IMG/VR virus record: IMGVR_UViG_3300037087_000760
Location: 1 to 64,000 of that record
Length of the DNA stretch: 64,000 nucleotides
Direction: 5' to 3' (one strand)
Shown here: positions 19,096 to 45,423 of the stretch, piece after piece
Layout: each line of letters starts with the position of its first letter
Numbering within the stretch: the stretch's first letter is position 1
Notes under the pieces: model-generated
What the model was told of the DNA's origin: nothing
Databases searched by the model: none
Seen by the model: the letters and a program-made list of their open reading frames with translations, nothing else
Program-made: the position numbers and the translations under genes

Positions 19096-19449
19096 TTATT
19101 TTTTGATTTCCGTTATCTCCATTTTTTCAAATGTGATGGATATTGGTTCATCACCAATTATTTTCATGTAATTCATATTAGAACTTAGCTTTATATTTCT
19201 TTGTCCCTGACCCTCTTTATCACATACTCTTATTGTTAATTCCTGAGGTTTAACACAAGATAGAATATTCTCAAATTTATCATCAGTTTGAAATGTTACA
19301 AGGATATTACACCTGTATAAATCCATTTTTTCTATCTTGACGAAATTACTTTCGAATTTATCCCATGAAATAGTATATGGTGTGAATGATTGAGTATCTT
19401 CAACTCCACTCATGGATGCTCGAACATTTGTAAAATGAGGTAACGGCAT
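19096..19449 (-). CDS. Short tail-tube (gp19)-like paralog
   Basis: N-terminus MPLPHFTNVRAS recalled from huge-phage tail tube proteins; late motif at 19469-19478. Confidence 0.4.
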   Translation of the reverse strand: MPLPHFTNVRASMSGVEDTQSFTPYTISWDKFESNFVKIEKMDLYRCNILVTFQTDDKFENILSCVKPQELTIRVCDKEGQGQRNIKLSSNMNYMKIIGDEPISITFEKMEITEIKK

Positions 19450-19532
19450 AATTGATAGGTTTTATTTTTATATATTAAGCTTAGTTCATTTCCTGTCTAA
19501 AAAAATTAATATATACTAAAAACTATTCAGTC

Positions 19533-20924
19533 TTGATGGATAAATTCAGTAATAAATACATAAATCAGTTCGACATTCTTAAAAACAGTATAGTTGGATT
19601 TGAGTTTGAATTCTATACTAAGCGTTCATTTTATAAATTACTTGAATTGTTGAACAGGGAACTCTCCCCAATTAAAGTTCATGGAAGAAGAAGATACCAT
19701 TCGGATTTCAAACCAGACGAATATAACTTTAAAATTGAACCTGATCTTTCAGGTGGTCCAGACATGGTTGAATTAATTACGGGCCCTATGCCTTATGTAA
19801 ATGCTAAGATAATTTTACTGAAAATATTAAAATTATTACAGGAACACGCAAAAACTGGAGATCGTTGTTCAGTTCACATAAATATATCTTTTGATACAGA
19901 TAAATGTGAGAAAGATGTCAGTGAAGTTAATAAACTAAAAATGATACTTGAAATTGATGAAAGTCTTATCTATAAATTCTTTCCAGATAGAAAAGATAAC
20001 TTTTATTCAAAGTCTATCAAAAAATTAATTCCATTTAAAGGATATAATTATTCTATTGATGCTGTGAATTTAACCTTAAATAATTTTCAATTGACTGATG
20101 ATACAAAATATTATGGAGTGAACCTGAAGGAAGCATTTAATGGACGATTAGAATTCCGTTATATTGGTGGAGATAAATATCAATTCAAGACTCGTGAAAT
20201 TATGGAGTTGATGGATTATTTCATTTCATTATCTTGGAATTGTATAAATGAAGAATTATCGAAAGAAAATATAGAAGATCTGAGAGAATATTTGGAAGAA
20301 AATATTAACATATTCAAAAATTTTACAAAAGTAGAAAATTTTGTCGCTGAATTTCCAACTATCCAATTAGAAATAGATAAGAATGACAGTTTCCTTATTA
20401 TCAAATCTCAATATGATCATATACAGGAAAAGCTTTATGACATCATCAGAAACATATATGATTTAAATAACTGTATAATCAATCAGGATTCAGTTGATAA
20501 CAGATTGGAAATAGTTGATGCCAGCTTTGAAACAATATTTACCCTTAAAGGTATTAATATTATTGATTCAAATGTTACAGGTGGCGAATATATTAGAGTT
20601 GAATTCCATAATGTTGATGTTAAGAATGCCCATATAAGTAACTGTACTTTAATAAACACCGATGTATTTAATTGTAAATTGGAAAACTGTGAGGTTGATG
20701 AAACCTGTACTCTCCGTGAATGTTATTTTGCTGGTGGTAAGATGGATGGTAATTTCGAAAGTGGTATAATGAGAGGGGGTGTAGTAGGTCAAAGGGGTGA
20801 ACTTGGAGCTGGTGTTGAGATTGTTACGGACACTGATTCTTATTTTGGTTCATTTAATGATGAAGAAGAAACAAAAGGTGGGAAAAAAGTAGTTAAGAAA
20901 TTAACTACAAAAGGAAAAATATAA
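19533..20924 (+). CDS. Putative amidoligase (COOH-NH2 ligase) with C-terminal beta-helix/pentapeptide-like region
   Basis: VGFEFEF, IEPDLS, ELITGP, CSVHINISF, KYYGVN, LEFRY; late motif at 19506-19515. Confidence 0.75.
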   Translation: MMDKFSNKYINQFDILKNSIVGFEFEFYTKRSFYKLLELLNRELSPIKVHGRRRYHSDFKPDEYNFKIEPDLSGGPDMVELITGPMPYVNAKIILLKILKLLQEHAKTGDRCSVHINISFDTDKCEKDVSEVNKLKMILEIDESLIYKFFPDRKDNFYSKSIKKLIPFKGYNYSIDAVNLTLNNFQLTDDTKYYGVNLKEAFNGRLEFRYIGGDKYQFKTREIMELMDYFISLSWNCINEELSKENIEDLREYLEENINIFKNFTKVENFVAEFPTIQLEIDKNDSFLIIKSQYDHIQEKLYDIIRNIYDLNNCIINQDSVDNRLEIVDASFETIFTLKGINIIDSNVTGGEYIRVEFHNVDVKNAHISNCTLINTDVFNCKLENCEVDETCTLRECYFAGGKMDGNFESGIMRGGVVGQRGELGAGVEIVTDTDSYFGSFNDEEETKGGKKVVKKLTTKGKI

Positions 20925-20929
20925 ATCCT

Positions 20930-21850
20930 GTGATGATAACATTTTTTAAACTGTTTGAATCAGACCTTATTTATATAAAGGGAGAAAATGGGAAAAACGG
21001 AAAGTCGGTTGTTTATTATGACAAAAAAGAAGGCCCTATTCCTTTCTTATATTATAAAGGAACTGTATATACGGGTGAGATAGGTGGTTCTCATGATGGT
21101 ATAATTGGGTATTATTTTAGTAGTGGGGATATGACTGAAGATTCGAAACAAGGTTCAAAGTATATGAAAGCTTACATGGGTCATACTTCACAGGGTAGGA
21201 TTTACACCAAGAGAAAATATGTAAGTTTTTGGAGAGTACCAGATAAAAAGGAAATGCGTTATGTATTAGGTGAAGTAGAACGACTTACTGGTGAGAAGAT
21301 TTTACATAATGGGTATAAGATACAATTCAGGGATGCTGGTGATGTAAAGGCACAGGAAGTATACGCTAAATTGGATATACCTGAATATCGTGAAACAAAG
21401 ACGATGTTACTGGATGATTACTTATATGAACCCGTTAAAAAAACAACCCCTTTAGCATACAGACAAGCGATATATGGGGAAAATAAATCTTATAAGATAT
21501 TCAAAAATAAAAAATATAAACCACAACTCACAAGTTCTGAACTTGTTGATTTCATATGTGATAATAATTTAAGAGACGCTAACGGTGAATTGGAATATCA
21601 GGATGCTAAAGAAATAGCTTACTGGAGTGAAAGTGGAATTTGGTATCTCAAAGAATTAATAGATCTGAATAAAGAGGGACTGAGTTTTATCTATAATAGA
21701 AAACCAAAATCTTTTGGTATTCCAATCATTGTGAAACATGATGTTGGAAATGATACATATGAAGTATTAGACGGGAAACACAGAATTGGTTATACCCGAT
21801 ATAAAGGAATTCCAACTATAATGGCTTATGTTTGTGAGAATGAATATTAA
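20930..21850 (+). CDS. CTS-like protein with C-terminal ParB/Srx-like domain
   Basis: MITFFKLFES; PIIVKH...YEVLDGKHRI. Confidence 0.6.
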   Translation: MMITFFKLFESDLIYIKGENGKNGKSVVYYDKKEGPIPFLYYKGTVYTGEIGGSHDGIIGYYFSSGDMTEDSKQGSKYMKAYMGHTSQGRIYTKRKYVSFWRVPDKKEMRYVLGEVERLTGEKILHNGYKIQFRDAGDVKAQEVYAKLDIPEYRETKTMLLDDYLYEPVKKTTPLAYRQAIYGENKSYKIFKNKKYKPQLTSSELVDFICDNNLRDANGELEYQDAKEIAYWSESGIWYLKELIDLNKEGLSFIYNRKPKSFGIPIIVKHDVGNDTYEVLDGKHRIGYTRYKGIPTIMAYVCENEY

Positions 21851-23162: not shown

Positions 23163-23492
23163 TTATTTTAAAGTAATTAAATAACAATTCGAGGCAAAAA
23201 CATTATCACAATATTCAGCCTTACATTTATATTCACCACTTGGTAAGAGCATTAATATGTCCTGTTGGTCAATCGGAAGATCCAATTGACCCATATTACC
23301 ATCAATAAAAACAGGAATATCATACCCAGCCAATTCCTCAGCATCTCCGTGAATATATGCCTTATTTGTTACAACACTATCCATTACAAAATCACCGTAA
23401 CTTTTAGGTTTAACCAAAGCTGGTTCTTGGTCTTTATCAAATATACCCAATAATGACATGGGTTTTGTGGTTGTAAATCTTAACTGTTTCAT
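23163..23492 (-). CDS. Hypothetical protein
   Basis: 109 aa. Confidence 0.6.
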   Translation of the reverse strand: MKQLRFTTTKPMSLLGIFDKDQEPALVKPKSYGDFVMDSVVTNKAYIHGDAEELAGYDIPVFIDGNMGQLDLPIDQQDILMLLPSGEYKCKAEYCDNVFASNCYLITLK

Positions 23493-23887
23493 ACAATCTT
23501 ATTTTTTAATAAATCCTTGTTTGCTTTTTTAATAGTTGGTCTTATTTTGGAATTGGTCTTTGCTTTTCCAACAGTATATAAATCAGTCGAAACTAATTTG
23601 TTATCATCATTGGATAAAACAATGAATTCATCCCCAGCATACCTTATAAATATATCCTTTTCGAACAATAAAGTTTTAATTTTTCTGACAATCAACCTTA
23701 TATGTTCGTCCCCATTAAAATGCCCACCTTCATTAACTTTCTTTAATCCATTAATGTCAATGAAGTACATAAAGGTATAATCTGTTAATTTGACTTCCCT
23801 GAATAAGAAATGACGATTATAGAGCTTGGTCATATCATCATGAAAAGCCATGTACTCTAATTCTCTTATTCTTTTTTCAGTAATCAT
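23489..23887 (-). CDS. Stand-alone, C-terminally short GGDEF-like domain (AGDEF)
   Basis: HDDMTKLYNR, IDINGLKKVN, GHFNGDE, RYAGDEF. Confidence 0.8.
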   Translation of the reverse strand: MITEKRIRELEYMAFHDDMTKLYNRHFLFREVKLTDYTFMYFIDINGLKKVNEGGHFNGDEHIRLIVRKIKTLLFEKDIFIRYAGDEFIVLSNDDNKLVSTDLYTVGKAKTNSKIRPTIKKANKDLLKNKIV

Positions 23888-27537: not shown

Positions 27538-28524
27538 TTATTTATGTAAGTCCCTGTATTTGTTGTTATAAGAAATACAAACGTCAAGGCAGTTTCCTCT
27601 ACAAATTGGATCTTCAAAACAGTTATGTTCATCGAACCATTTCTTTCTATCTGATCTCATATTTTCAGAAACCTCTCCAATTGGTTGACCATATTCTCTC
27701 ATATAAATAACACAAGGAAAATGGAAATTTCCGGCTATAACAGAATCATCCAAAACCAATGCACATTTCGATGAATCAGTTTCAGACATGCCTCTTACAT
27801 TGATTCCGTTCCTGAAATGATTTACCCTGTATTTAAGGATCGGGTACTTATTCAATAATTCTTCAGGTACTTGACCAAGAGCTTCAATCGGTTCATTCCA
27901 TTGGGCTGCCGAAATAATACGAATATCGGATACCCCCCTTGAATCAGCAAACTTGATTGTATCAATAGTTTTCTGAACATTATCGGGTGTTAAAACAACA
28001 CCAACTGTAACATAAGTGAGTTTGGAAATATGTTTGATATTTTCAACGACTTTTTCAAATGAACCAATAACCCCACCAGACATTTTTTCTCCATCATCAG
28101 CACAACAGGCATCCAATGAAATTGAGAAGTCATTAACTCCAGCCTCAATCAATTCATCGTATAGTGTAGTTCTGTTAGAACCATTGGTAGAAATGGCAAT
28201 TCTTTTAATACCCTTTGACTTAGCGTACTTTACGATTTCAATAATATCGGGATGTAATGTAGGTTCACCACCAGAAAAACGAATGTTCTCCAGAGGTAAG
28301 GGTTCACACCACAAATCGATGTTTCTTTTAATTTCTTCCAGAGAAAGCATTTTGAATTTACGATCACCGTAGATCCAAGCTTTCAAACCACGACAGTAAG
28401 GACATTTGAAATTACAATATTCAGTGATAATCATCTCACATCTTTTCATTTGAGATGAATCAGACGAATTTTTGGCTCTTTCGTCAGAAAGGGAATAGAA
28501 ACCTATATTCTTTAAATCAGTCAT
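27538..28524 (-). CDS. Radical SAM protein
   Basis: CNFKCPYC, FSGGEPTL, ISTNGS, C-terminal Cys cluster. Confidence 0.9.
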   Translation of the reverse strand: MTDLKNIGFYSLSDERAKNSSDSSQMKRCEMIITEYCNFKCPYCRGLKAWIYGDRKFKMLSLEEIKRNIDLWCEPLPLENIRFSGGEPTLHPDIIEIVKYAKSKGIKRIAISTNGSNRTTLYDELIEAGVNDFSISLDACCADDGEKMSGGVIGSFEKVVENIKHISKLTYVTVGVVLTPDNVQKTIDTIKFADSRGVSDIRIISAAQWNEPIEALGQVPEELLNKYPILKYRVNHFRNGINVRGMSETDSSKCALVLDDSVIAGNFHFPCVIYMREYGQPIGEVSENMRSDRKKWFDEHNCFEDPICRGNCLDVCISYNNKYRDLHK

Positions 28525-31552: not shown

Positions 31553-32815
31553 ATGAAAACAACAAAAACATATTCAATTGATGAAGATATATACAAATCT
31601 TTTGAAAAACTAACAGAGAGATTAAACAAGAATAAAAGTTCTATCATCGAAAATTCAATTATTGAATTTCTTAAAGAAAATGGAGTTTCAAATTATAGTA
31701 CATATTCTTTAATAACTAATCCTAATTATGAAGTTACGATTGAAAACCAAGATGAAACTTTTACATTTTTGAGTGATGGTAGTAAGATATTGAATTCAGT
31801 ATTCGAACAATCTTTTAAGAAAGTAGAAAAAATGAATTTATCAGATCCCCCATCTATACTCATACTTCCACCATTGGTTATTAAATTATATATCAAAGAT
31901 TATGATAAAAAAATATCGTTTATAAATACTATCAATAAATATAAAGATGGTGAAAAATATTCCTTGATTGGTAAAAAATTCAGATCTATTATAAATAATA
32001 AAATTTTCAAGGTAATGGAAGATGGAAAGAAGCATGTTTCCGTTGTTGAAATTATAGAGGGTATAGATTCCGAAAAACTCAAAGTAAATGATCCATATTT
32101 GAATATAAAGAAAGATTTGTTTTTTACTTCTTTTAAAATGATGGAAGAACAAGTTCATATGGGTGTTGGTGATTATGCCTTTGAATATTTGGGTACATCC
32201 AGAATAGACGGGGCTCCGATTTTCAAAGTAGGAGGTGGTCTTTTTCATGAATTCTTTTCCGATGATTTTGATAAATTCAAAAAATACATAAGGGAAAGAG
32301 AATATGTTACCATTTATTCTATAAACAATACAGGGAGTGATAAGGTATTTTTAATTGTTGATGAAATTGAAAAACTACCAATGTTAGAAGATTTAATACC
32401 GAGATTTGATTCAGAGAAATATAATGAAGTAGAGAAAAGTAAAGAAGAAAGAAAAATATTACAAAAGGCCATTGAAGAATCCTTGGGATCTGGTATCGAG
32501 GCAACTATGGCCAAAGATGATGCGGGAAATGATACGATGAATAATATGAAATCATCATATGAAGTCATATTGGATAATATATTATTTACTAATCAATCTG
32601 AAGATAAAACAAATAAATTTATACAGTTAATGAAAGAATGTTTATATGATATTCGTAAAGGTGATTTTATAAATGAATTTGAAACATCCAATCAAATTGT
32701 AAAATTTATTAAAAGTTTGGGAGTAATAGAAACATTAGATCCAAATAGTGAAATTTCTAAAGTTAAATATCAACTATTAAGAGAAATCATAAAAATACAT
32801 AATCAAAAATACTAA
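31553..32815 (+). CDS. Protein with N-terminal ribbon-helix-helix domain
   Basis: KTYSIDEDIYKSFEKLTERLNKNKSSIIENSIIEFL. Confidence 0.65.
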   Translation: MKTTKTYSIDEDIYKSFEKLTERLNKNKSSIIENSIIEFLKENGVSNYSTYSLITNPNYEVTIENQDETFTFLSDGSKILNSVFEQSFKKVEKMNLSDPPSILILPPLVIKLYIKDYDKKISFINTINKYKDGEKYSLIGKKFRSIINNKIFKVMEDGKKHVSVVEIIEGIDSEKLKVNDPYLNIKKDLFFTSFKMMEEQVHMGVGDYAFEYLGTSRIDGAPIFKVGGGLFHEFFSDDFDKFKKYIREREYVTIYSINNTGSDKVFLIVDEIEKLPMLEDLIPRFDSEKYNEVEKSKEERKILQKAIEESLGSGIEATMAKDDAGNDTMNNMKSSYEVILDNILFTNQSEDKTNKFIQLMKECLYDIRKGDFINEFETSNQIVKFIKSLGVIETLDPNSEISKVKYQLLREIIKIHNQKY

Positions 32816-32816: not shown

Positions 32817-33782
32817 ATGAAAAATATAAACATAACAGACTTCGAGAATGTACTATTTGATATTTTTCCAGCAAGCAGAGAAAAATATGAAATTATGTAT
32901 AATGATTTTAGATATGATGAATATGGTATGGAAGTAAAAACTGATGACATACCTGAAAATGTCATAATTAAAATAAGTAATCCAAATGATAAAACATATC
33001 CGAATGTATATGGACCTGCCGGTTGGACTAAGGTAGGTGATATGAAACCTTTGATTATCGATAAAAAAACATTGAATATCAATAATGGTAGATTCGATGA
33101 CCAAATAATAAGAACCCTGTTGTTGGAAGCCATTGAAATGTATTTTTTCAAAAAGGCAGAAGAATTGGGTGAATTAAATAGGATATGTAAACATGCACCA
33201 TCAACAGAAAAATTCGATTTGAACATACCAGAATTTAAAAAGAAAGATTTGGTTATCAAAGAAATGGACGAAAATCGTGTAGTACTGAAAAGATGGAATG
33301 AAAGTGAATCTATATCCAGAAGAATATTACCTCAGATGATAAGGTGTGGAAGTTGGATAGCGACAAACGGTAGAATTGGACCGGGGAATTATCTGATTAT
33401 GAATAAGAGTACACATAATTATTTAGAACCATATTTCGAAAAATTAAATGGTGGATATTATAAGAAAGAACAGTTTGAAGAATATTACAAATCCTGTAAA
33501 TACACTCAAGATGTATTACCTGAATCGAAAAATCTTGTCGCTAAATTATCCAGTTTTAATATAATTGTGGATGATAGAGTTCCAGATGATAAAATAATAG
33601 AGGGTAGGAAAAATGGTCAGTATAAAATAGGAATAAATGCCGTTATATGGTGTAATGATGATGGTGATGTTTTTTATGAAGATAGAGAGAATGAGATTGA
33701 ATTGAGATATAATGTAGTTGATGTTGGATTTTTTCCTTGGAATCAGTTTTACACGATTCATTTAACCAGAGAGGAAAATTAA
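32817..33782 (+). CDS. Truncated major-capsid (gp23/gp24)-like paralog
   Basis: IATNGRIGPGNYLIMN, FNIIVDD, ELRYNVVDVGFFP resemble the gp23 C-terminal half. Confidence 0.55.
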   Translation: MKNINITDFENVLFDIFPASREKYEIMYNDFRYDEYGMEVKTDDIPENVIIKISNPNDKTYPNVYGPAGWTKVGDMKPLIIDKKTLNINNGRFDDQIIRTLLLEAIEMYFFKKAEELGELNRICKHAPSTEKFDLNIPEFKKKDLVIKEMDENRVVLKRWNESESISRRILPQMIRCGSWIATNGRIGPGNYLIMNKSTHNYLEPYFEKLNGGYYKKEQFEEYYKSCKYTQDVLPESKNLVAKLSSFNIIVDDRVPDDKIIEGRKNGQYKIGINAVIWCNDDGDVFYEDRENEIELRYNVVDVGFFPWNQFYTIHLTREEN

Positions 33783-33793: not shown

Positions 33794-34324
33794 ATGATTA
33801 AGACATTTGAAAAATTCAATTTATTGAAAGATGTAATGAATAAGTTCAATAAACTTGCTCATGTTACTCGACTATCATTAAATAGAGAGATGGAAAGAGA
33901 TTATCATCAATTGGTTCGTAAATTCAATATCCCTGATGTCGCTGTTATAAATAAAATGGCACCGACAACAGTATCAGAATTGGAAAAGGAATTAGATACA
34001 ATAATTGTAAAATATCCACAATTAACTGAAAGTGTGGAAATTAAGGATGATAAAATAGGAAAGGAATTTTGGTTCGAATATCATTGTAACGAGGGTGAAG
34101 ATAGTCCAGATTATCCAATGTATCTTCATTCACATCAGAAATGTACCATACTTTCGATATCTGAACCGGGAATTGGAGAAACTGATATCGAAAGATATGA
34201 AAACGCTGCCCAAAGATTATATAAGGTAAGATTCAGTGATGGTTTCGAATGGGATGCATTTGAGGATGAAATACTGGATTCAGAAGAAGAATATCAAAGA
34301 CCAGATCCACCAAAAAAGAAATGA
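33794..34324 (+). CDS. Putative internal head protein (CTS-like)
   Basis: MIKTFEKF; late motif at 33779-33788. Confidence 0.65.
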   Translation: MIKTFEKFNLLKDVMNKFNKLAHVTRLSLNREMERDYHQLVRKFNIPDVAVINKMAPTTVSELEKELDTIIVKYPQLTESVEIKDDKIGKEFWFEYHCNEGEDSPDYPMYLHSHQKCTILSISEPGIGETDIERYENAAQRLYKVRFSDGFEWDAFEDEILDSEEEYQRPDPPKKK

Positions 34325-34328
34325 CACA

Positions 34329-34700
34329 ATGAAACATCTAAAATTATTTGAAGAATATAAAACAAAAATAGGTTTCATATGTACAACATTTGTATCATCA
34401 GAAATTGATGTGGTAATACCAAAGAAAAAAGCCGATGGATATTTAAAATCAGCCTTTGGAGGGATAAACAATACTAATGATCGATGTAGAGAATTTCTAA
34501 ACTTATCCCCCGATTATATAGCTGATGTTTTTGATACTGAAGGATACTTATCAATATCAATTAAATCAAGATATTGGTCTGAAAGGAAAGAAAAAATTAC
34601 AGAGGAAATAAAGAATATACTACTCAAGATTTTTCCTTATGTTACAGACTTCAAAGAAATTGGAAGAGATGAATTTTATGAAATAATAATGAATAGATGA
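34329..34700 (+). CDS. Putative internal head protein (CTS-like)
   Basis: MKHLKLFEEY. Confidence 0.65.
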   Translation: MKHLKLFEEYKTKIGFICTTFVSSEIDVVIPKKKADGYLKSAFGGINNTNDRCREFLNLSPDYIADVFDTEGYLSISIKSRYWSERKEKITEEIKNILLKIFPYVTDFKEIGRDEFYEIIMNR

Positions 34701-35251
34701 AAACAGTAAAAGAATGTTTAAGAACATTATCAGAAAAAAATATTGACACGAATATCAACAGAACTATTAAAATCTTGTGTGAACAACTTGATGATGATCA
34801 ACTGGAATATAAATTAACGAATGGAGTGAAACTGGACAATCAAATGATTAATCTATATTTTCTAAAAAATGTGGGATTCAAATGTGATAATATTTGGGTA
34901 GAAAAATATGGACACCTACCGATCTGTAATTTTATTGAAAAGACATTAAATCAAACATACAAATCAGAGAATAAACCAAAAAGAACTGAATTTCCTTTCA
35001 TTTTCAATGGTACTTTATATCGTATACCGACAAATAAAGAACTACAAGAATTTGAACGATATCCAGATCTCACTCCTCAACAAGTTTTGGATGAATTCAA
35101 ATATATATGTATTGGAAAGGGAATTCTGAACCTTGAAATTAAAAATCAAATTTGTGATTGTATTCAGAAATTAATTGGTTTATATCCAGATGATTTGAGA
35201 TACAAAGAGTCTTTTTTATTGGCCAAAGGATTGACAGGTGGAAGATTATAA
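34697..35251 (+). CDS. Hypothetical protein
   Basis: ATGA overlap, 184 aa. Confidence 0.65.
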   Translation: MKTVKECLRTLSEKNIDTNINRTIKILCEQLDDDQLEYKLTNGVKLDNQMINLYFLKNVGFKCDNIWVEKYGHLPICNFIEKTLNQTYKSENKPKRTEFPFIFNGTLYRIPTNKELQEFERYPDLTPQQVLDEFKYICIGKGILNLEIKNQICDCIQKLIGLYPDDLRYKESFLLAKGLTGGRL

Positions 35252-36597: not shown

Positions 36598-37096
36598 TCC
36601 ATGATGTAACTATTTTAAATCCTTCAATTGGTAGGTTTCCCAATGTATCCATATAATCTTGATATTGGGAATCAGTAACTTCTTCGGGAATTACTGCTCT
36701 ATCAATTTTATTTTCAATATCCTTTTTAATTCTTCTTTTAGCTTCTTCACGAGAAACATAAAAAACAAGTGCAATCTTTTTAAAATCAACTTCTTTTTCT
36801 ATATCATTTATGAATGAAATTCTCTTTTCAGTTTGTATATTGGTAGCATCTAAGATAACATTCTTACCTTTTTTCAAATTGTGAATAATCATTGCTTTCG
36901 CAAATTGAAAAACATCCGAGTTTATTATTTGATTACTTATATCACCAGATAAATCTTTTCTTATCTGGTCAGTACTGACAACAATAGTATTCTTCCATTT
37001 TGGTTTGTTTTCTTTGATCCATGTAGATTTCCCACTACCTGAGATTCCTACCATAATAACCAATGTGGGATTCAAAAATTCTTTATAATTGTCCAT
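36587..37096 (-). CDS. P-loop kinase (AAA_33 / Pnk kinase-like)
   Basis: GISGSGKST, VSTDQIR, ILDATN. Confidence 0.8.
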   Translation of the reverse strand: MDNYKEFLNPTLVIMVGISGSGKSTWIKENKPKWKNTIVVSTDQIRKDLSGDISNQIINSDVFQFAKAMIIHNLKKGKNVILDATNIQTEKRISFINDIEKEVDFKKIALVFYVSREEAKRRIKKDIENKIDRAVIPEEVTDSQYQDYMDTLGNLPIEGFKIVTSWNED

Positions 37097-37153
37097 ATTG
37101 TTTTATCTTTTTTACGAATTTAAAATATTTCTCATTCATAAAAAAATATTATT

Positions 37154-40100
37154 TTAAAATTTTATGATATAGAATCTTCCTTGGTCAATGATATAATAAC
37201 CAAAATCAGTCGTGAAGTATCTATAATCCAAACTATTAAAATTAGTATTGACCAACATGAAAGACCTACCTTCATTATAATTGAATAACTTATTATTTGT
37301 CATTCCGAGTCCATATCCATTATAAGATTCCGTTTCAATATACATATAAGGATCTACACTTGCATCAATATTGAAACTATAAGAAAGTAAATCTTTTTTG
37401 TAAAGTTCATGATATTGTACTGGTTCGAGTTCATTTGTTGACTGATTCAACCTGAATGTTTTTATTTTAGCAGTATAGTAATCCGGCATCGTACAACCAG
37501 TAATCATATAGAAATTAACCGTCATTAAATAATCAGTTCCCGTATTCAAGGTTTGAATGTAATCGAAATTAACAGCATTAACCTGTTGAGTCACTGATAT
37601 TTTTCTGACACGATTCGATGGATCGTAATCCATGTACATAGTCGCCACAGTTTGTTCGAGACCAGTAATATCAAGAATATTAGCTGATAGTGGAATTATA
37701 TTTCTCCTTAACCATTTAACCAATCCAGTAAGTTTTGTCTGTACCTCGGCTAATGAATATAAGTTAATATAATTTCCATCAAAATCTGTAATATGATAAG
37801 TTAAATTGAATAAGTTAGTTTTTTTATAGTTCATAGAATCTGGTTCATGAGATGTCCATCCCGGAACACTTCTATCGAATATATTTTCAATCAAAATCTT
37901 ATGAAGTTTACCATACAACAAAGAACCCTGTTTGATATTTCGATAATATTCATATAAATCCAAATCATTATATCCAAAGTAATTAATAGCATTAATAAGA
38001 GCACGATATGAACCAATATAATTATATATCTCTGGATGAACGGCTAATAATTCTTTTCTTTTTCTGTTTAGAATTGTAAAATCAATACCAGCATCTTCGA
38101 TATCACTTTCTTTATAAATTGGATAGGCATCTAATCCCAAATTAGATCCCAACATTTTCAAATTTTGATCGAATCTGTAATCTTCTATTTCAGTTTGTCC
38201 ATATAATTGAATTGTCGCTATAAGAGATGGTTCTACTTTAATTATAAAATCATATGTCTTACCTGATGCTGATGTATCAAAGAATGGTAGATTTGTATTG
38301 TCTACTGTTATTTTATTTTTTGTTAAATCGACAATCTGACTAATAGCGTAACTTTCATATAAAGTTTCTCCCGTTACAGTTATTTCAAAAAAATTCAATG
38401 ATATATTCAGCCCTACATCTAAACCAGTGTTATTAAAACTGAAAAATATATCATCAGTAATATAAGATATCGTATTTCCACTGATTAGAAAATTAACTTT
38501 TTTACCTATTTTGTTTGATGTTGTTCCAGTAAATGTTGTATGTTCGATTTGTTCAATTCTCATTGTATCTGTAATCACACCTTCATTCGGTGTATTGAAT
38601 CCCAAGAAAATTTCAAGTGGAATTGGATGATAATCATAAAAATTAGCAGCATTATATTCTTCTAATGGATATAACAATTCGTTAAAAATAGTTTGTTGAT
38701 ATTCTGGATTTGCTATCTCCAATGGATTAGTGTTTACATTTCTATTCAAAAAAACCAAATTCGTATAACCTGAATTAAACAATGGTTTTGGGCCTATATA
38801 AGTCAGATTTCCGTTTGGTTGAATTTGGTCACCTGAATAATCATAATAGAATATACTTTCGTCATACGGATCTTCCCAACTCATTTTATAATAAACCTGT
38901 TTATTGTAGTTTCCTCTTGGTTTTCTTAAAAATTCATGAATTGATATAGTAAGATTTTCAGTATAATTATTATCACTCGACCATCCGAAAAATGGACCCT
39001 GATATGATAATTGAATTGTATCTTCAGTTAATCTTAATATATTATATTGCTTATTATTTAATGTATGAGTAGAACCACTGACGGATATAATCATACCCGT
39101 AGTCAATTCAAAATCAAATAAATTCTGAGATACAGAAAATAATTCATTACTCGATATAACCATTGAATGATTTATCGTATTTTCTATTATGGTATAAGTA
39201 GAATAAGAATTAACCTTAATCTCCAAATTTATAATTTCTACATTCGGATATTGACCCTCTAATGTTAATGTATATCCACTCGTTGTTGTCCCACTACTCA
39301 GTGTAATTCCATTTTGATCAAACATTGTAAAATATTTGTCTATAAAACTATTTATGGTATCTATTGTACAACTGGTGACAGTTCCAGAAAGAGGAACATA
39401 AAAATTATTTTCATTTATTGTTAATTGAATTCCATAATTTACAGAATCAATTCCCAAATCAAATAGAATTGTTGTTTTGAAATTGTGGGCCAATAAAGTT
39501 GTATCATAAAGATGTATTGTTTCGTTTTGTAATTGTTCATTTACATTGAAATAATAAGCATCGGTTACTCCCGTCATCGTTGTTCCACTATCATAATAAT
39601 CAAAGTTTTTACCAATTGTAAGAGGAATATTATTTATCGAAGATTTGGCTGAAAAATATGGATGCCAATTATAATCCAATCCACCCAAAACCATGAAATT
39701 ATTAGTCCCATTATTCCAATGAAAACAATCAAATCCATAACGATTAAACATATTTGCATATTTATTTCTTATGGCTGTTATTGTGTTCTCATAGAAATAG
39801 GTTGTATTACCAGAATTTAAGATGTCTTGATTTACAAAGAGTTTATTTGTTGTGGAAAAACAAGTTGTGAAACCTGACCAAATGACTGTTGGTGGACAAG
39901 CGACAGCGTTTTGTTGAGCATATAATTTTTTAATCCTTTTTTTATTAATGGTTTTATCAATTTTATATGTATATCCACTCTCAGGAATTATATATTCAGC
40001 CACTTCAATTCTTCCATTTTGAATATCCAGAACTTGGAAACTTCTATTATCATGAAATGTTAATCCCGAAAGATTTGGAATGGCTGTTAAATGTATAATA

Positions 40101-41149
40101 TCATTATAGGTAAATCCAGTAATTGTACTTGTAGTTTCTATATAATTCAATCCATTCAGAACATAAAATTTACAAGTATCAGTTGTTAAATATTGAGTAT
40201 CAGCAAAACCTGTTATTGTAAATGTTGGATTATTTGGATGTATATATCCACCATTTATATCTTCGAATATCACGGTTTGACCAGTAGACACAAAATCAAT
40301 AGTTGTGTTTATCCCATTCATAAACTCGATTGTAGTTCCACTATATCCAGTATCATTATAAGTTATTTTAACATTTCCCTCATACAATTCGGGTCTTTGT
40401 GTAAACAATTCAATTTCCATTGAGATCGTACCACCTGTTACTCCACTTAAAAATAAAAAATCATAAAATTTATTATTTAAAATATTATAATCATTATATG
40501 TAAATACTCCATTATTTGAAGAACTATTAACTACGGATATTTTTTTATTTTTATAAAAATTCAAATTTGTTATATCAACTAATTTTTGTTGACCATAATC
40601 TAATACCTTAATAATATTAGCAGAAGATACTGTTCCACCACTGTTCAAAGTAAAATCAAAAGTATAGTTATCTGTTTTAGTTTCGACTAAAATGGCATTT
40701 TTTCTATGACCGAGAACATCAAAAAATGTTATTCCACTTGATATGAAATCATTATTTCCAATTCCAGTTCCAGTTACATTATTAAAATAAACAACACTTC
40801 CAATTGTAAACTTTTTATCGAAATCAGTTCCGTAAATCCATTTAGAATAAAAATTTGGATTACTATTTACTTTTTGAATATTTATAATATCTTGATTTTC
40901 AAATGTTTTACCAACAAAAGTTGTTCCACTCCAATTGAATAACTGTGATTCTCTTAAATCAAATTCAGAATTAAAATTATATGGTTTAACATCTTCAAAT
41001 ACATAAATGCAAAGGGTTCTAAATGTATCACTACTATTTTCATCAAAGAATATTTTTCCACTCCAAGTTTGTCCTGTCGGATCATATATGAAGTTATATG
41101 GAAATCCTTCTTTATTAAAAAACATTAGATTGTCAAATTGTGAGTTCAA
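37154..41149 (-). CDS. Large virion structural protein, probable baseplate wedge
   Basis: 1331 aa, T/S/G/N-rich beta character, GSYRALINAINYFG; late motif at 41169-41178. Confidence 0.6.
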   Translation of the reverse strand: MNSQFDNLMFFNKEGFPYNFIYDPTGQTWSGKIFFDENSSDTFRTLCIYVFEDVKPYNFNSEFDLRESQLFNWSGTTFVGKTFENQDIINIQKVNSNPNFYSKWIYGTDFDKKFTIGSVVYFNNVTGTGIGNNDFISSGITFFDVLGHRKNAILVETKTDNYTFDFTLNSGGTVSSANIIKVLDYGQQKLVDITNLNFYKNKKISVVNSSSNNGVFTYNDYNILNNKFYDFLFLSGVTGGTISMEIELFTQRPELYEGNVKITYNDTGYSGTTIEFMNGINTTIDFVSTGQTVIFEDINGGYIHPNNPTFTITGFADTQYLTTDTCKFYVLNGLNYIETTSTITGFTYNDIIHLTAIPNLSGLTFHDNRSFQVLDIQNGRIEVAEYIIPESGYTYKIDKTINKKRIKKLYAQQNAVACPPTVIWSGFTTCFSTTNKLFVNQDILNSGNTTYFYENTITAIRNKYANMFNRYGFDCFHWNNGTNNFMVLGGLDYNWHPYFSAKSSINNIPLTIGKNFDYYDSGTTMTGVTDAYYFNVNEQLQNETIHLYDTTLLAHNFKTTILFDLGIDSVNYGIQLTINENNFYVPLSGTVTSCTIDTINSFIDKYFTMFDQNGITLSSGTTTSGYTLTLEGQYPNVEIINLEIKVNSYSTYTIIENTINHSMVISSNELFSVSQNLFDFELTTGMIISVSGSTHTLNNKQYNILRLTEDTIQLSYQGPFFGWSSDNNYTENLTISIHEFLRKPRGNYNKQVYYKMSWEDPYDESIFYYDYSGDQIQPNGNLTYIGPKPLFNSGYTNLVFLNRNVNTNPLEIANPEYQQTIFNELLYPLEEYNAANFYDYHPIPLEIFLGFNTPNEGVITDTMRIEQIEHTTFTGTTSNKIGKKVNFLISGNTISYITDDIFFSFNNTGLDVGLNISLNFFEITVTGETLYESYAISQIVDLTKNKITVDNTNLPFFDTSASGKTYDFIIKVEPSLIATIQLYGQTEIEDYRFDQNLKMLGSNLGLDAYPIYKESDIEDAGIDFTILNRKRKELLAVHPEIYNYIGSYRALINAINYFGYNDLDLYEYYRNIKQGSLLYGKLHKILIENIFDRSVPGWTSHEPDSMNYKKTNLFNLTYHITDFDGNYINLYSLAEVQTKLTGLVKWLRRNIIPLSANILDITGLEQTVATMYMDYDPSNRVRKISVTQQVNAVNFDYIQTLNTGTDYLMTVNFYMITGCTMPDYYTAKIKTFRLNQSTNELEPVQYHELYKKDLLSYSFNIDASVDPYMYIETESYNGYGLGMTNNKLFNYNEGRSFMLVNTNFNSLDYRYFTTDFGYYIIDQGRFYIIKF

Positions 41150-41201
41150 AATAGAATTGTTTTTTCTTTATATATTAAAAGAGGTGAGTAGTAAAAACAT
41201 T

Positions 41202-41969
41202 TTAATACATTCTATTTGGTGGAATAAAATCTCTTTTCCATCTATAATGTCCATTTGTTATTCTGAATTCACAATAATAAGCTGATAAACTGGATATTAC
41301 TGATGATATTCCACCAATCAAATATGGAAAATTAAGAAGGGGCATTGAATAAGTTGGTGTTATTTTTTTAGTCGCCACTATTTTCCCATTAAAAAATAAT
41401 CTTATCGTATCAAAATATCTGGATACAGCCACATGATACCAATTTACAGCGTCGGGCCAAATACTTGTAATTCCTGACATGGTTAAAAAGAAGTCCCATG
41501 AACCAGCATTTTTTACCCCAAAAGTTAATCCTGTACTGTGGGTTAATAACGGGGAAATCCCACCATCAATAAAAAAACCGTAGAAATTATTTGAATTGAA
41601 AACACAACCATTACTTCCAAAATTTTGTCCGACTGCTGATATAGGACCACCACCAGTTACTTTTATCCAAAAATCTATGCAGAAATTATTTGTTCCAAAA
41701 TTCCAATCGCTTGTGTTAGTATCACAAGATAGTACACGAAATCCACCACCGAATGATGTTGCATTCCAACATGGACTATTATTGAAAACTCCACCAGTTG
41801 AAGATTGTGTTACTCCAGTTAATGTACATTGATGGGGGGAAGAAGATCCTCTCGACACATCCCAAAAATAAGGTTTTGGTGGTGGAATGGGCGTTATGAC
41901 AGTTTCATTTCCATGTGATAAAAATGTACAGAATTTATCATTACCAAATCCATTTTTATGTGTTATCAT
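41202..41969 (-). CDS. LamG/concanavalin-A-like virion protein
   Basis: FCIDFWIK, WYHVAVSR, LFFNGK, EFRITNG. Confidence 0.8.
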   Translation of the reverse strand: MITHKNGFGNDKFCTFLSHGNETVITPIPPPKPYFWDVSRGSSSPHQCTLTGVTQSSTGGVFNNSPCWNATSFGGGFRVLSCDTNTSDWNFGTNNFCIDFWIKVTGGGPISAVGQNFGSNGCVFNSNNFYGFFIDGGISPLLTHSTGLTFGVKNAGSWDFFLTMSGITSIWPDAVNWYHVAVSRYFDTIRLFFNGKIVATKKITPTYSMPLLNFPYLIGGISSVISSLSAYYCEFRITNGHYRWKRDFIPPNRMY

Positions 41970-43141
41970 ACATAAGGTATTATTTCAGGAACATCATTTA
42001 TAAATGTTAAAGCAACAGTTAAATCAGAAGCATCTGCCCCAACAGGAAAAATACCACCTTTTTGTGTGGTAGTTAATTCTAAAACATCACCCATTTTTAT
42101 GTTGTATTTATTAATATCAATTCCAATATCAGTAGAAGTATATGAAATGGAATTCATCTCAATTCCATCACCAGAATTATCCGTGCTAACCTTCTTCGAA
42201 TTAATTGTAGCATTTATTTTTGGTTGTATAGTTGCATTGGCATCGGATTTATGAACCCCCATTATTCTAACTAAAAGAGCAGAGTATTTTTGCCACTCAT
42301 ATCTAAATAAATTTAAATCGGATAATAAAGTTAATCCAGATACCATAGCATAAGATCCAGATATATTAAAATATTCATCTAAAACCATTTCCGGATTTCC
42401 ATAATATAAATTTTGTATATCGGGAAGATCACCAGTAAGAGGTGCACCAGCGATATAAATTGTATCCACTGTCATTCCAGTAATAATTCCATATTTCGAA
42501 ATCGAGGCTGTATTTCCACTATCAAAAAAGTATTTAAGAGGTGTTCCTATTTTTAAAGGACCGGGAGTTGTATTCGTATCCAGCCATGTCGTATCTGTAA
42601 ATGTGATACTATTTAAAGTTGTTGGAGTGATTGTAAATCCAGAGGGATTAATTAATGTCCAACGATCAGATGCTGTTGGTGTACTTCCATTCATACCAGA
42701 AGTACCAGCTGTTCCATTAACACCAACACCACTCGTTCCACTCGATCCACGGCCACTTGTTCCTGAACTACCTAAAAAAGTACCATCTTTCCCAGAACTA
42801 CCACTTGTCCCATGAGTACCAAGAAAACTACCATCTGCACCAGAAGTACCAGCTGTTCCACCTGTTCCCTGAGGTCCGACAACAGATAATCCACTTGTTC
42901 CAGCCGTTGCACTTGTTCCAGCACTTCCACTTTTACCTGATGTACCTGAAATACCACTCGTTCCATTTATACCAGCTGTTACCCCACTTTGAATATAAGT
43001 AATATTACCGTATTCATCCATTTGGGCTAATTTTCCACCCAATTGTGTTCCACCTGAGGTATCATATCCAAGAAGAAGCCACCCATCTCTGGGAAATTCT
43101 ACTTGTGTAAAATCTTGTACTTTAAGTTTTAATATACTCAT
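41966..43141 (-). CDS. Tail-fibre-like protein with GTSG repeats
   Basis: G-T-S-G-x repeat tract; late motif at 43162-43171. Confidence 0.65.
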   Translation of the reverse strand: MSILKLKVQDFTQVEFPRDGWLLLGYDTSGGTQLGGKLAQMDEYGNITYIQSGVTAGINGTSGISGTSGKSGSAGTSATAGTSGLSVVGPQGTGGTAGTSGADGSFLGTHGTSGSSGKDGTFLGSSGTSGRGSSGTSGVGVNGTAGTSGMNGSTPTASDRWTLINPSGFTITPTTLNSITFTDTTWLDTNTTPGPLKIGTPLKYFFDSGNTASISKYGIITGMTVDTIYIAGAPLTGDLPDIQNLYYGNPEMVLDEYFNISGSYAMVSGLTLLSDLNLFRYEWQKYSALLVRIMGVHKSDANATIQPKINATINSKKVSTDNSGDGIEMNSISYTSTDIGIDINKYNIKMGDVLELTTTQKGGIFPVGADASDLTVALTFINDVPEIIPYV

Positions 43142-43881: not shown

Positions 43882-43887
43882 AATTTT

Positions 43888-43915
43888 AAACTTTTTATTT
43901 TTCCTACCTTATATT
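43888..43915 (+). promoter_or_regulatory. AAACTTTT-N14-TATATT promoter
   Basis: Recurrent class. Confidence 0.6.
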
Positions 43916-43939
43916 AAGAAAAAATCTCCTAAAATAATT

Positions 43940-44479
43940 ATGAGTACAATTGATCAATTCAGAGAAGTAATACAGAACTGCCAGCGTGTTTTTGTAGGGA
44001 AGATGGAAGATTATGGTCTTTCATGGAGAATACTCAGACCATCATCATTAACAGACCAAATTTTTATTAAAGCCAGTCGAATAAGAAGTTTGGAAGAAAA
44101 GAAAACATCAAAGATAAATGAGGGAGTAGAGCCAGAATATATTGGAATGATAAACTATTCGGTAATGGCTATAACTCAAATGAAATTTCCTTATAATGAA
44201 AATCCTAATTTATCAAAAGAAAATGTATTAGACATCTACATAACCGAGACAAATGAAGCTTTAGAATTGATGTTGAATAAAAATCATGATTATGATGAAG
44301 CTTGGAGAAAAATGAGAATTAGTAGTTTAACTGATATAATATTACAAAAACTTTTAAGAATAAAACAAATAGAAGATAACGATGGAACAACAAAAGTGTC
44401 AGAAGGATTAGAAGCCAATTATTATGACATCATTAATTATTCCATTTTTGCCCTGATAAAATTATCAGAGATTAAATAA
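43940..44479 (+). CDS. DUF1599 (nucleotide-modification-associated domain 1) tandem protein
   Basis: KMEDYGLSWR...RIRSLE...INYS and KNHDYDEAWR...RIKQIE...INYS. Confidence 0.8.
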   Translation: MSTIDQFREVIQNCQRVFVGKMEDYGLSWRILRPSSLTDQIFIKASRIRSLEEKKTSKINEGVEPEYIGMINYSVMAITQMKFPYNENPNLSKENVLDIYITETNEALELMLNKNHDYDEAWRKMRISSLTDIILQKLLRIKQIEDNDGTTKVSEGLEANYYDIINYSIFALIKLSEIK

Positions 44480-44535
44480 TACAACAAACAACAAACAAAA
44501 CAACAAACAACAAACAAAAAATAATCAACAAAACA
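44480..44535 (+). repeat. CAA/CAAA low-complexity tract in 5' leader
   Basis: ACAACAAACAACAAACAAA duplicated. Confidence 0.7.
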
Positions 44536-45423
44536 ATGAAAGAAAGAGAAACAAAGATTGGAACTTTCAGAATCGTCCAGAACGATACTGGATTAACATT
44601 TTATCATGATGATACTGGAATATGGTATTCACTCACACCAAATTCAGTAGAAGAACTTAAAAAATTTCTTACATTATCTGAAAAAAAGGAAATTTCTTAT
44701 TTAGATAGAACATATTTAGATAAAAGAAGAATATTAAGACAATTATCCATAAAAGATGAAATAAGAAATTATGTCAATATAATGTCCGATAAAGTATGGG
44801 AAAAATTATTATCTTCCATAGAACATACACAGAAATTTAATTTTCTTGAGGAACTTCAATTATATTTTCACATTAAATGTTTATTAATTGATGGGTATTT
44901 AGCTTTCGAAGTGGTATACAATGAAAAACAAACGGACATTATCGACTTATCTCCAATAGATCCTTGTAGTTTAACACCTATATTTCATTCATCCGCTGGT
45001 GAAAGAAAAAATGATTTTGATTGGATACAACATAATGATAATGAAAAACTTAAAAGAGTTTTATCTCAAAATCAAGTGATTTATATATCATACTCACCCG
45101 ATCATGAATATGGTCCGACTTCTTATGTTGAAGAATTAAAAGAGTCGTATGAAAAAGTTAAGACATTGGAAAATGAATTGATGGCATCAAGAATGAATCT
45201 TCCCGGTAATGTTGGAGAAAAATTGGGTGGAGAAATAGCTTTCAAACAATTAAAAAGAGCTGATAAGAAATTACAATTTATGTCTAAAATTCCTAAATCT
45301 ATTTTGAAAGAAGAAAAAACTTTTAGTGATGATGTAAGATATAAAACATTCTTGAATAGAATATGTAATATATTTGAAACTGATCTAATAGGAAAATTAA
45401 TCGAACTAAAAAATAATCTTTAA
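44536..45423 (+). CDS. Truncated portal (gp20)-like paralog
   Basis: IDGYLAFEVVY, IIDLSPIDP, QVIYISYS, SYVEELKESYEKVKTLE resemble the gp20 N-terminal half. Confidence 0.6.
   Translation: MKERETKIGTFRIVQNDTGLTFYHDDTGIWYSLTPNSVEELKKFLTLSEKKEISYLDRTYLDKRRILRQLSIKDEIRNYVNIMSDKVWEKLLSSIEHTQKFNFLEELQLYFHIKCLLIDGYLAFEVVYNEKQTDIIDLSPIDPCSLTPIFHSSAGERKNDFDWIQHNDNEKLKRVLSQNQVIYISYSPDHEYGPTSYVEELKESYEKVKTLENELMASRMNLPGNVGEKLGGEIAFKQLKRADKKLQFMSKIPKSILKEEKTFSDDVRYKTFLNRICNIFETDLIGKLIELKNNL

What the first reader, a model, noticed from the sequence alone, without database searches (positions are those of the whole stretch)
19096..45423. Scattered truncated paralogs of tail tube, major capsid and portal
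Seen: a 117-aa gp19-like start (19096), a 321-aa gp23 C-half-like protein (32817) and a 295-aa gp20 N-half-like protein (44536), none in a morphogenesis cluster. Known: several defence systems are triggered by capsid, portal or tail proteins (e.g. Avs, CapRel). Inferred: retained partial copies could be decoys for such sensors or assembly modulators.
Basis: inference. Interest (0 to 1): 0.65.

Follow-up and report, generated by a model that had tools for sequence, protein, structure and literature searches.

The report
Domain-trimmed capsid and portal paralogs, megaphage
A peat-soil megaphage keeps small, selectively maintained copies of its portal and major capsid proteins (and a tail-tube-fold protein) that have lost their outer domains and lie far from any head-gene cluster; what they do is unknown, but they are not decaying remnants.

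Summary
The three ORFs exist as described. P0003 (44536-45423, 295 aa) is a true homologue of the T4-type portal. It matches the 608-aa portal of megaphage LR756501 at BLASTP 2e-42 (hhalign probability 100%). It keeps the N-terminal segment, first wing segment, stem helix alpha5 and helix alpha8, and lacks most of the clip, the second wing segment and the crown. Thirty such short forms (279-346 aa) form one clade nested among 508-619-aa portals. Relatives carry both a short and a full-length copy. P0002 (32817-33782, 321 aa) aligns to the C-terminal 260 residues of the LR756501 gp23-type capsid protein (4e-13; hhalign 98.6%). Its model superposes on T4 gp24/gp23 across the HK97 core (Z 12.4), so it lacks only the N-terminal region and the insertion domain. 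P0001 (19096-19449, 117 aa) has no sequence match to gp19 but resembles Hcp/tail-tube proteins in four structure libraries, weakly. dN/dS is 0.16-0.32, lengths are conserved and synteny is conserved, which excludes neutral decay for P0002 and P0003. The same genome holds further capsid-derived mini-ORFs. The decoy idea is untested. I favour accessory subunits or modulators of head assembly, at modest confidence.

The parts
44536..45423 (+). P0003, 295-aa short portal paralog. It keeps the N-terminal segment, wing segment 1, stem helix alpha5, part of alpha7 and helix alpha8. Most of the clip, wing segment 2 and the crown are absent.
32817..33782 (+). P0002, 321-aa compact HK97-fold paralog of the gp23-type major capsid protein. 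It lacks the N-terminal region of about 300 residues and the insertion domain.
19096..19449 (-). P0001, 117-aa beta-barrel protein with Hcp/tail-tube-like fold. The similarity is at fold level only. The N-terminal 21 residues are conserved but modelled as disordered.
31553..32815 (+). P0051, 420-aa ORF ending 1 nt before P0002. It has an RHH-like N terminus and a short conserved motif shared with capsid residues about 229-245. Its link to P0002 is uncertain, because the ORF is absent upstream of one P0002 orthologue.
43940..44479 (+). DUF1599 (nucleotide-modification-associated) gene, the conserved upstream neighbour of the short portal.
45427..45765 (+). 112-aa ORF, the conserved downstream neighbour of the short portal. 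It shows no portal similarity.
33794..35251 (+). Three small ORFs (176, 123 and 184 aa) co-directional with P0002, with no informative family match. Only one or two ORFs of similar size (182-186 aa) follow the P0002 orthologues in relatives.

Best explanation
What it is (shown): the window is part of a roughly 0.74-Mb megaphage whose nearest tblastn matches are the LR7565xx huge phage genomes and the Lak phages (Mahaphage-type). It comes from peat metagenomes. P0003 belongs to a conserved, monophyletic family of about 280-345-aa proteins. The family arose once by duplication of the T4-type (gp20-like) portal gene within these phages. It then lost most of the clip (the terminase/neck docking site), the second wing segment and the crown. 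It kept the N-terminal segment, wing segment 1, stem helix alpha5 and helix alpha8. P0002 is a compact HK97-fold derivative of the phage's gp23-type capsid protein. It lacks the long N-terminal region and the insertion domain. P0001 is a small protein with the Hcp/tail-tube fold. All three are kept by purifying selection or by conservation across genomes. The same genome carries further capsid-derived mini-ORFs.

How it works (inferred): the retained parts are the ones that make subunit-subunit and portal-capsid/scaffold contacts in T4. The lost parts dock the packaging motor, the neck and the outer bracing. I therefore propose that these proteins engage the genuine head (and tail) assembly intermediates through ancestral interfaces. 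They would act as accessory or modulatory subunits, for example timing or limiting nucleation, or serving as minor internal components of the very large head. I consider this more likely than an immune-decoy role. Confidence in the identity is about 0.9. Confidence in this mechanism is about 0.35-0.4.
For: Homology:
- P0003 versus the LR756501 portal: 2e-42, hhalign probability 100%.
- Six of 31 family members hit PF07230, N half only.
- P0002 versus the LR756501 capsid protein: 4e-13, hhalign 98.6%.
- P0002 model versus T4 gp24/gp23: Z 12.4/12.0 over 229-251 residues; all top Foldseek hits are HK97 capsid proteins.

Domain map: T4 gp20 domain limits are from PMC4493910. They were transferred through the alignment and counted. 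Wing segment 1 is about 160/186 retained, alpha5 24/24, clip 8-27/80, wing segment 2 0/22, and the crown is essentially absent in every short form.

Ancestral constraint: 38 of 52 columns that are at least 85% conserved in the short family carry the same residue as full-length portals.

Selection: NG86 dN/dS is 0.16 (P0002 vs L017) and 0.32 (P0003 vs L018), like neighbouring genes. ORF lengths are bimodal, 303-345 versus 508-619 aa. There is one origin on the tree, SH-aLRT 100.

Coexistence with full-length genes: LR756501 and IMGVR 3300042261_001186.

Further trimmed capsid derivatives conserved between genomes.
Against: - No direct evidence of any interaction. The one complex prediction gave no answer and counts neither way.
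- The genes lie among nucleotide-metabolism and unknown genes (DUF1599 here, thymidine kinase in LR756501), not late structural genes. That would fit an early, non-virion role.
- The short portals evolve much faster than true portals (long branches). This is also expected under an arms race.
- The P0002 family is narrow (8 clusters; 3 distant IMG/VR loci).
- The P0002 model is confident in only one of five runs.
- P0001 rests on borderline fold scores only.
- The full-length portal and capsid genes of this very genome were not seen.
Confidence: 0.4

Rival explanations
1. Immune decoys or sponges. The trimmed copies are made apart from the late genes. They occupy host sensors of capsid, portal or tail-tube proteins without activating them, or they mask the real proteins.
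For: Capsid protein, portal and tail tube protein are all documented triggers of Avs-type sensors, Lit and CapRel (bioRxiv 10.64898/2026.01.04.697583). The short portals have long branches relative to true portals. The genomic context is nucleotide metabolism rather than morphogenesis. Very small capsid-derived ORFs of 70-161 aa exist that could hardly be lattice subunits.
Against: Known Avs sensors are activated by binding the conserved fold, so extra copies of the fold would more likely trigger than block. Most conserved residues of the short portal are the ancestral ones, not a new surface. No known anti-defence family matches. Paper searches found no precedent.
Confidence: 0.2
2. Ordinary structural genes that are simply displaced. 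P0002 would be the vertex (gp24-equivalent) penton protein. P0001 would be a genuine small tail component of the tube-fold family, such as a tube terminator or initiator.
For: The best structural match of P0002 is T4 gp24, tied with gp23. The ORF after the LR756501 capsid gene is a glycosyltransferase, not gp24-like. Named BFVD hits for P0001 include gp3-like tail completion proteins, gp19 and baseplate tube proteins. No PF06841 tube gene was found in G000 or LR756501.
Against: LR756501 has no detectable P0002 orthologue: tblastn hits only its true capsid gene. It carries a different 479-aa gp23-like ORF instead. The P0002 family is rare. This explanation does not cover the clip-less portal copy, because a portal without clip and crown cannot dock terminase or neck (PMC4493910).
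Confidence: 0.15
3. Dominant-negative 'poison subunits' used against co-infecting related phages (superinfection interference). The trimmed copies would enter a competitor's portal ring or capsomers and block packaging.
For: Oligomerisation parts are retained while motor-docking parts are lost. Evolution is fast. The short clade is sister to a different portal group (L049 group) than the group holding LR756501's own full-length portal.
Against: The phage's own portal shares the same conserved interface residues, so self-poisoning would have to be avoided somehow. There is no data on co-infection.
Confidence: 0.1
4. Neutral remnants of old duplications, or fragments carried along by homing endonucleases, that have not yet been deleted from a very large genome.
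For: Several capsid fragments are tiny and out of order. In LR756501 two lie 350 nt from a LAGLIDADG endonuclease gene and are separated by an in-frame stop. A GIY-YIG endonuclease gene lies near the P0002 orthologue in L016.
Against: For P0002 and P0003, dN/dS is 0.16-0.32. Intact ORFs of conserved length occur in 8 and 38 clusters down to about 30% identity. Invariant residues and conserved synteny are present. The 161-aa mini-capsid ORF is conserved at full length in LR756501. This rival may still hold for the smallest ORFs.
Confidence: 0.05

Closest known systems
T4 portal protein gp20 (Pfam PF07230; PDB 3JA7) and the full-length portals of Mahaphage-type megaphages
   Same: There is clear sequence homology over the N-terminal segment, wing segment 1, stem helix alpha5 and helix alpha8. 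Signature motifs are shared, and 38 of 52 conserved columns are identical.
   Different: P0003 is about half the length. Most of the clip, the second wing segment and the crown are missing. The fully conserved Asn of the portal stem motif is replaced. The gene sits outside any head module and coexists with a full-length portal in relatives.
T4 gp23/gp24 pair (a major capsid protein and its vertex paralog; PF07068; PDB 1YUE, 5VF3)
   Same: P0002 is an HK97-fold paralog of the major capsid protein encoded in the same genome lineage. Its model superposes best on gp24/gp23.
   Different: gp24 keeps the insertion domain and sits next to gene 23. P0002 lacks the insertion domain and the N-terminal region, gives no PF07068 hit, lies in an unrelated neighbourhood and has a narrow distribution.
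Hcp / gp19 / gp3 / gp48-54 tube-fold family of contractile systems
   Same: The P0001 model is a beta-barrel with one helix. It matches Hcp proteins (Z 8.9-7.9), PVC and phage tube proteins, and gp3/gp19-like viral models.
   Different: There is no sequence-profile match. P0001 is only 117 aa against about 140-175 aa. Scores lie in the range where unrelated split-barrel folds also appear. No sheath or tail genes are nearby.
Encapsulins (compact HK97-fold shell proteins)
   Same: They are similar in size to P0002 and have a bare HK97 core. They appear among the Foldseek hits.
   Different: P0002 is demonstrably derived from the phage's own gp23-type capsid protein. No cargo-like neighbour was recognised.

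Membership tests
T4-type portal (PF07230 Portal_T4 / gp20) | Significant sequence similarity to the family. | tested here: met
   P0003 itself is below Pfam thresholds. However, it matches a PF07230-positive 608-aa portal (E 8e-71) at 2e-42 and hhalign probability 100%. Six of 31 family members pass PF07230.
T4-type portal (PF07230 Portal_T4 / gp20) | Complete wing-stem-clip-stem-wing-crown architecture. | tested here: not met
   Clip 8-27/80 aligned, wing segment 2 0/22 and the crown essentially absent in all short forms. Domain limits are from PMC4493910.
T4-type portal (PF07230 Portal_T4 / gp20) | Forms the dodecameric DNA channel at the unique vertex and docks terminase. | not testable with these tools
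   The terminase-docking clip is missing, so this function is unlikely. The complex prediction gave no answer.
HK97-fold major capsid protein, gp23/gp24 type (PF07068) | Profile match to PF07068. | tested here: not met
   No hit for P0002 at E up to 1. The six-frame search of the genome hits only 125667-126069.
HK97-fold major capsid protein, gp23/gp24 type (PF07068) | Homology to a bona fide gp23-type capsid protein, and the HK97 fold. | tested here: met
   BLASTP 4e-13 and hhalign 98.6% to the LR756501 capsid protein, which itself hits PF07068 at 6e-24. The model matches T4 gp24/gp23 at Z 12.4/12.0.
HK97-fold major capsid protein, gp23/gp24 type (PF07068) | N-terminal propeptide region and insertion domain of T4-type capsid proteins. 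| tested here: not met
   P0002 residues 57-317 align to capsid residues 343-601 of 608. The first roughly 300 residues have no counterpart beyond a weak 32-residue match.
Tail tube gp19 (PF06841) / Hcp fold | Profile match to PF06841 or another tube family. | tested here: not met
   No Pfam or PHROG hit. No PF06841 hit in G000 or LR756501. A profile search of 1.84 billion proteins found only 7 small unnamed relatives.
Tail tube gp19 (PF06841) / Hcp fold | Tube/Hcp beta-barrel fold. | tested here: inconclusive
   The model has pLDDT 74.5. Best matches are Hcp3 at Z 8.9, Hcp1 at 8.3 and PVC tube at 7.8. Foldseek PDB best is 1e-3 to Hcp. Named BFVD hits are tube-family proteins apart from two labelled 'baseplate wedge protein', with E 2e-3 or weaker. 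Atlas leads agree. Split-barrel flavin reductases and PilZN score nearly as well.
Anti-defence decoy / sponge | Binds a host sensor or its signal and lowers its activation. | not testable with these tools
   No computation available here addresses it. No precedent was found in paper searches.

The most novel reading that the evidence does not exclude
Megaphages encode a conserved 'shadow set' of domain-trimmed head and tail proteins: a clip-less portal, an insertion-less capsid protein, capsid-derived micro-proteins and a mini tube-fold protein. This set is expressed apart from the morphogenesis genes. It acts as structural mimics that blunt fold-sensing host immunity (Avs-type receptors), or that sabotage competing phages. 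Either would be a class of counter-defence built from the phage's own structural genes.
Probability: 0.15. Interest if true: 0.85.

Novelty: new variant of a known kind. Interest (0 to 1): 0.55.

Why it matters
Paralogs of head proteins are known (T4 gp23/gp24). A widespread, monophyletic family of portal copies that has shed the clip and crown, together with compact and miniature capsid derivatives, did not turn up in my searches of the held literature. These proteins give a concrete handle on two open questions. One is how half-megabase phages build and regulate very large heads. The other is whether phages turn their own structural folds against the fold-sensing immune receptors that have recently been shown to recognise capsid, portal and tube proteins. 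The family is easy to test by co-expression with cognate portals or with known sensors in laboratory strains.

Tried and rejected
1. Intragenomic paralog search by BLASTP and by HMMs of A1, A2 and A4 against all ORFs of the 211-kb record found no second copy of any of the three.
2. Alternative genetic codes are not needed. Coverage by long open frames barely changes if TAG or TGA is read through.
3. Strain-level SNP analysis was impossible. Contigs from other samples are 99.5-100% identical over 14-21 kb.
4. DNA of the closest homologues P0004 and P0049 is not held, so dN/dS for P0003 used a 62%-identical orthologue and none was computed for P0001.
5. Looking up the same-sample full-length portal (L031) to tie it to the 736-kb contig failed: no exact record.
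6. Complex prediction of P0003 with the L031 portal gave no answer (score 0.17, mark 0.34). This is not evidence either way.
7. RNA evidence: no listed run holds the stretch.
8. Sheath (PF04984) and gp19 (PF06841) searches were blank in G000 and LR756501. The true tail tube was not located, so paralogy of P0001 could not be tested.
9. Read-through from P0003 into the next ORF was rejected. The two are in the same frame in the window, but in different frames in the L018 and P0004 contigs (coordinates).
10. P0051+P0002 as one split capsid gene is left open. Only a short motif supports it, and P0051 is absent upstream of one P0002 orthologue.
11. The ORF after the LR756501 capsid gene was tested as a gp24 equivalent and rejected. 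It is a glycosyltransferase.


Full report
**Setting**

The window is the first 64 kb of an IMG/VR record of 210,983 bp (GC 0.31). IMG/VR labels it a provirus that is 71% complete. The exact P0002 and P0003 proteins also lie on a contig of 736,551 bp. The nearest tblastn matches are the 634-735-kb 'uncultured phage' genomes LR745206 and LR756500-4, and the Prevotella Lak phages. Runs of the same study are labelled peat metagenome. Table 11 reads the genome well, and reassigning TAG or TGA adds almost nothing. The window also holds a cluster of 14 tRNA genes.

**The observation**

The three ORFs exist with the stated lengths. None has a second copy in the held 211 kb by BLASTP or family HMMs. 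None gives a usable Pfam or PHROG hit on its own; P0003 gives only PF04860 at E 0.016.

**P0003 (44536-45423, 295 aa) is a portal derivative**

- The word search found 38 homologues of 163-371 aa, four with precomputed PF07230.
- Scanned individually, 6 of 31 aligned members hit PF07230 (best 1.6e-12) and 7 hit PF04860. The matches always fall on profile positions about 8-200 of 433.
- LR756501 carries a full-length T4-type portal: a 608-aa ORF matching PF07230 positions 8-428 at E 8e-71.
- P0003 matches that portal at 2e-42 (37% identity). P0003 residues 14-221 align to portal 43-273, and residues 265-288 align to portal 397-420. hhalign gives probability 100%.
- That portal aligns to T4 gp20 with residues 248-506 on gp20 252-504.
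- T4 gp20 domain limits are wing 70-254 and 378-450, stem 255-278 and 359-377, clip 279-358, helix alpha8 399-428 and crown 451-524 (PMC4493910).
- On that map, every short form keeps wing segment 1 (about 160/186 positions) and stem helix alpha5 (24/24).
- Every short form also keeps part of alpha7 and about two thirds of alpha8.
- Every short form lacks most of the clip (8-27/80 aligned), all of wing segment 2 (0/22) and the crown.
- In T4 the clip docks the packaging ATPase and the neck. The wing contacts the capsid, and the N-terminal region is needed for head assembly.

**Origin and maintenance of the short portal**

- A pattern scan of IMG/VR with the family alignment returned 80 loci. 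The ORFs under the matches are bimodal: 303-345 aa or 508-619 aa.
- One contig (IMGVR 3300042261_001186) carries both a 338-aa and a 605-aa form. LR756501 carries both P0036 (342 aa) and the 608-aa portal.
- In a tree of 90 sequences, the 30 short forms are one clade (SH-aLRT 100). The clade is nested within megaphage portals and is sister to the L049 group. Its terminal branches are much longer than those of full-length portals. This was a quick search, and long branches make the exact sister group unsure.
- Of 52 columns at least 85% conserved in the short family, 38 carry the residue that is also conserved in full-length portals. The family-specific changes cluster at the start of stem helix alpha5, next to the lost clip.
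- NG86 dN/dS against a 62%-identical orthologue is 0.32, similar to neighbouring genes.
- The order DUF1599 gene, short portal, roughly 110-aa ORF is kept in three lineages.
- In LR756501 the orthologue lies between a thymidine kinase and an M16 peptidase.
- LR756504, LR745206 and LR756502 show only one portal-like place each. In LR756504 it lies beside the true capsid gene, so the short copy may be absent from some Mahaphages.

**P0002 (32817-33782, 321 aa) is a capsid-protein derivative**

- Its only phage-database hits fall on LR756501 77366-78142. That is the C half of the genome's gp23-type capsid gene (608-aa ORF; PF07068 6e-24).
- BLASTP gives 4e-13, with P0002 residues 57-317 aligned to capsid 343-601. 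hhalign gives 98.6%.
- The AlphaFold model from 8 sequences has pLDDT 70.6 and pTM 0.72. Only one of five runs was confident.
- Every one of the top 50 Foldseek PDB hits is an HK97-fold shell protein, with T4 first.
- VIA-align gives T4 gp24 Z 12.4 (240-251 residues, model 1-320 on gp24 22-422) and gp23 Z 12.0 (model 10-319 on gp23 108-521).
- P0002 is therefore a compact but essentially whole HK97 core. It lacks the long N-terminal region and the insertion domain, rather than being a bare C half.
- The family is small: 8 clusters, 42-78% identical, 259-321 aa, with 50 invariant columns. Only 3 distant IMG/VR loci were found.
- dN/dS is 0.16 against an 80%-identical orthologue.
- The surrounding gene order is conserved in relatives: radical-SAM gene, P0002, small ORFs, an AAA_33 (zeta-toxin-like) kinase, a roughly 1,330-aa ORF.

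**P0001 (19096-19449, 117 aa)**

- It has three near-identical relatives by the word search. A full profile search of 1.84 billion representatives found seven small unnamed relatives.
- It has a 116-aa orthologue in LR756501.
- No tube family matches by sequence.
- The model (pLDDT 74.5, residues 1-21 disordered) is a beta-barrel with one helix.
- Foldseek PDB puts T6SS Hcp first (1e-3), along with eCIS tube proteins.
- VIA-align across 48,161 chains puts Hcp3, Hcp1 and Hcp5 first (Z 8.9-8.1), followed by PVC and phage tube proteins. Flavin-reductase split barrels and PilZN come close behind.
- In BFVD the named top hits are gp3-like, gp19-like or baseplate tube proteins, plus two labelled 'baseplate wedge protein' (E 2e-3 to 5e-2).
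- The ESM Atlas feature and structure searches point the same way.
- This is coherent but borderline. I call it a probable tube-fold protein. Paralogy with the phage's own tail tube is untested, because no tube or sheath gene was found.

**More of the same outside the window**

tblastn with the LR756501 capsid protein against the 211-kb record finds further pieces.
- A 161-aa ORF (196838-197323, minus strand) joins capsid residues 38-121, 364-410 and 560-584 in order. It has a 38.7%-identical full-length orthologue in LR756501.
- Two adjacent micro-ORFs of 70 and 98 aa (125652-126150) match PF07068 positions 220-272 and 159-197 (32.8 and 22.3 bits).
- LR756501 has two tandem capsid-derived micro-ORFs 3 kb downstream of its short portal and 350 nt from a LAGLIDADG endonuclease gene. 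It also has a 479-aa gp23-like ORF elsewhere.
- The ORF just upstream of P0002 (P0051, RHH-like N terminus) shares a 16-residue motif with the capsid insertion region. The motif is conserved in its 470-aa orthologue. The ORF is missing upstream of one P0002 orthologue.

**Interpretation**

Neutral decay is excluded for P0002 and P0003. What they keep is the core fold and the ancestral contact residues. What they lose is the machinery-docking and bracing parts. That pattern is most simply read as proteins that still bind the real head components without doing their jobs, that is, accessory or modulatory subunits of head assembly.

The decoy idea is not excluded. All three protein classes are known immune triggers, the short portals evolve fast, and the neighbours are nucleotide-metabolism genes. 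Against it, known sensors are activated by these folds, and no test was possible.

P0002 as a displaced vertex protein, poison subunits against competitors, and endonuclease-borne relics (for the micro-ORFs only) remain as minor rivals.

The complex prediction and the RNA-run search gave nothing usable.

Noticed in passing
window 9399-12848 (-): A cluster of 14 tRNA genes (Cys x2, Met x2, Gly x4, Arg, Leu, Asp x3, and one with an odd anticodon loop). It coincides with the GC rise at 10-12 kb.
   Followed up: no
window 31553-32815 (+): P0051 has an RHH-like N terminus (PF01402, E 0.0018). It also has a conserved motif of the form E-[YF]-[LI]-G-x-S-R-I-D-G-x-P-[IM]-F, shared with the insertion region of the LR756501 capsid protein. 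It ends 1 nt before P0002. It may be a second capsid-derived piece fused to a DNA-binding domain.
   Followed up: partly
G000 125652-126150 (+) and 196838-197323 (-), outside the window: Three capsid-derived mini-ORFs (70, 98 and 161 aa). The 161-aa one is a collinear triple-deletion derivative, conserved at full length in LR756501 at 276348-276836.
   Followed up: partly
L004 9482-10028 (LR756501 145582-146128): Two tandem capsid-derived micro-ORFs (capsid residues 461-590, E 6e-13) are separated by an in-frame TAA. Both end in a similar acidic motif (DPYGEE-[ND]-W). They lie 350 nt downstream of a LAGLIDADG homing-endonuclease gene and 3 kb from the short portal.
   Followed up: partly
whole record G000: IMG/VR classes the record as a provirus, 71% complete. 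Its proteins occur on a 736,551-bp contig, and its relatives are free megaphages. The 211-kb record is therefore probably a mis-trimmed piece of a megaphage genome.
   Followed up: partly
window 36587-43141 (-): A conserved block: an AAA_33 (zeta-toxin-like) kinase (36587-37096), a 1,331-aa ORF without any family match (37154-41149), a Laminin_G_3 protein (41202-41969) and a collagen-repeat protein (41966-43141). These may be fibre-like or surface proteins lying between P0002 and P0003.
   Followed up: no
window 23489-23887 (-), 27538-28524 (-), 50422-52187 (-): Auxiliary genes: a small GGDEF-domain protein, a radical SAM enzyme, an HSP20 chaperone and an AAA ATPase.
   Followed up: no
window 47333-48664 (-): This 443-aa ORF is split into 186 and 238 aa in an otherwise 99.5-100% identical contig from another sample (L013). 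This is a strain-level disruption.
   Followed up: no
L016 1267-1977 (-): A GIY-YIG/NUMOD3 homing-endonuclease gene lies 2.7 kb from the P0002 orthologue in a related contig. Endonucleases near capsid-derived ORFs may bear on how the fragments spread.
   Followed up: no
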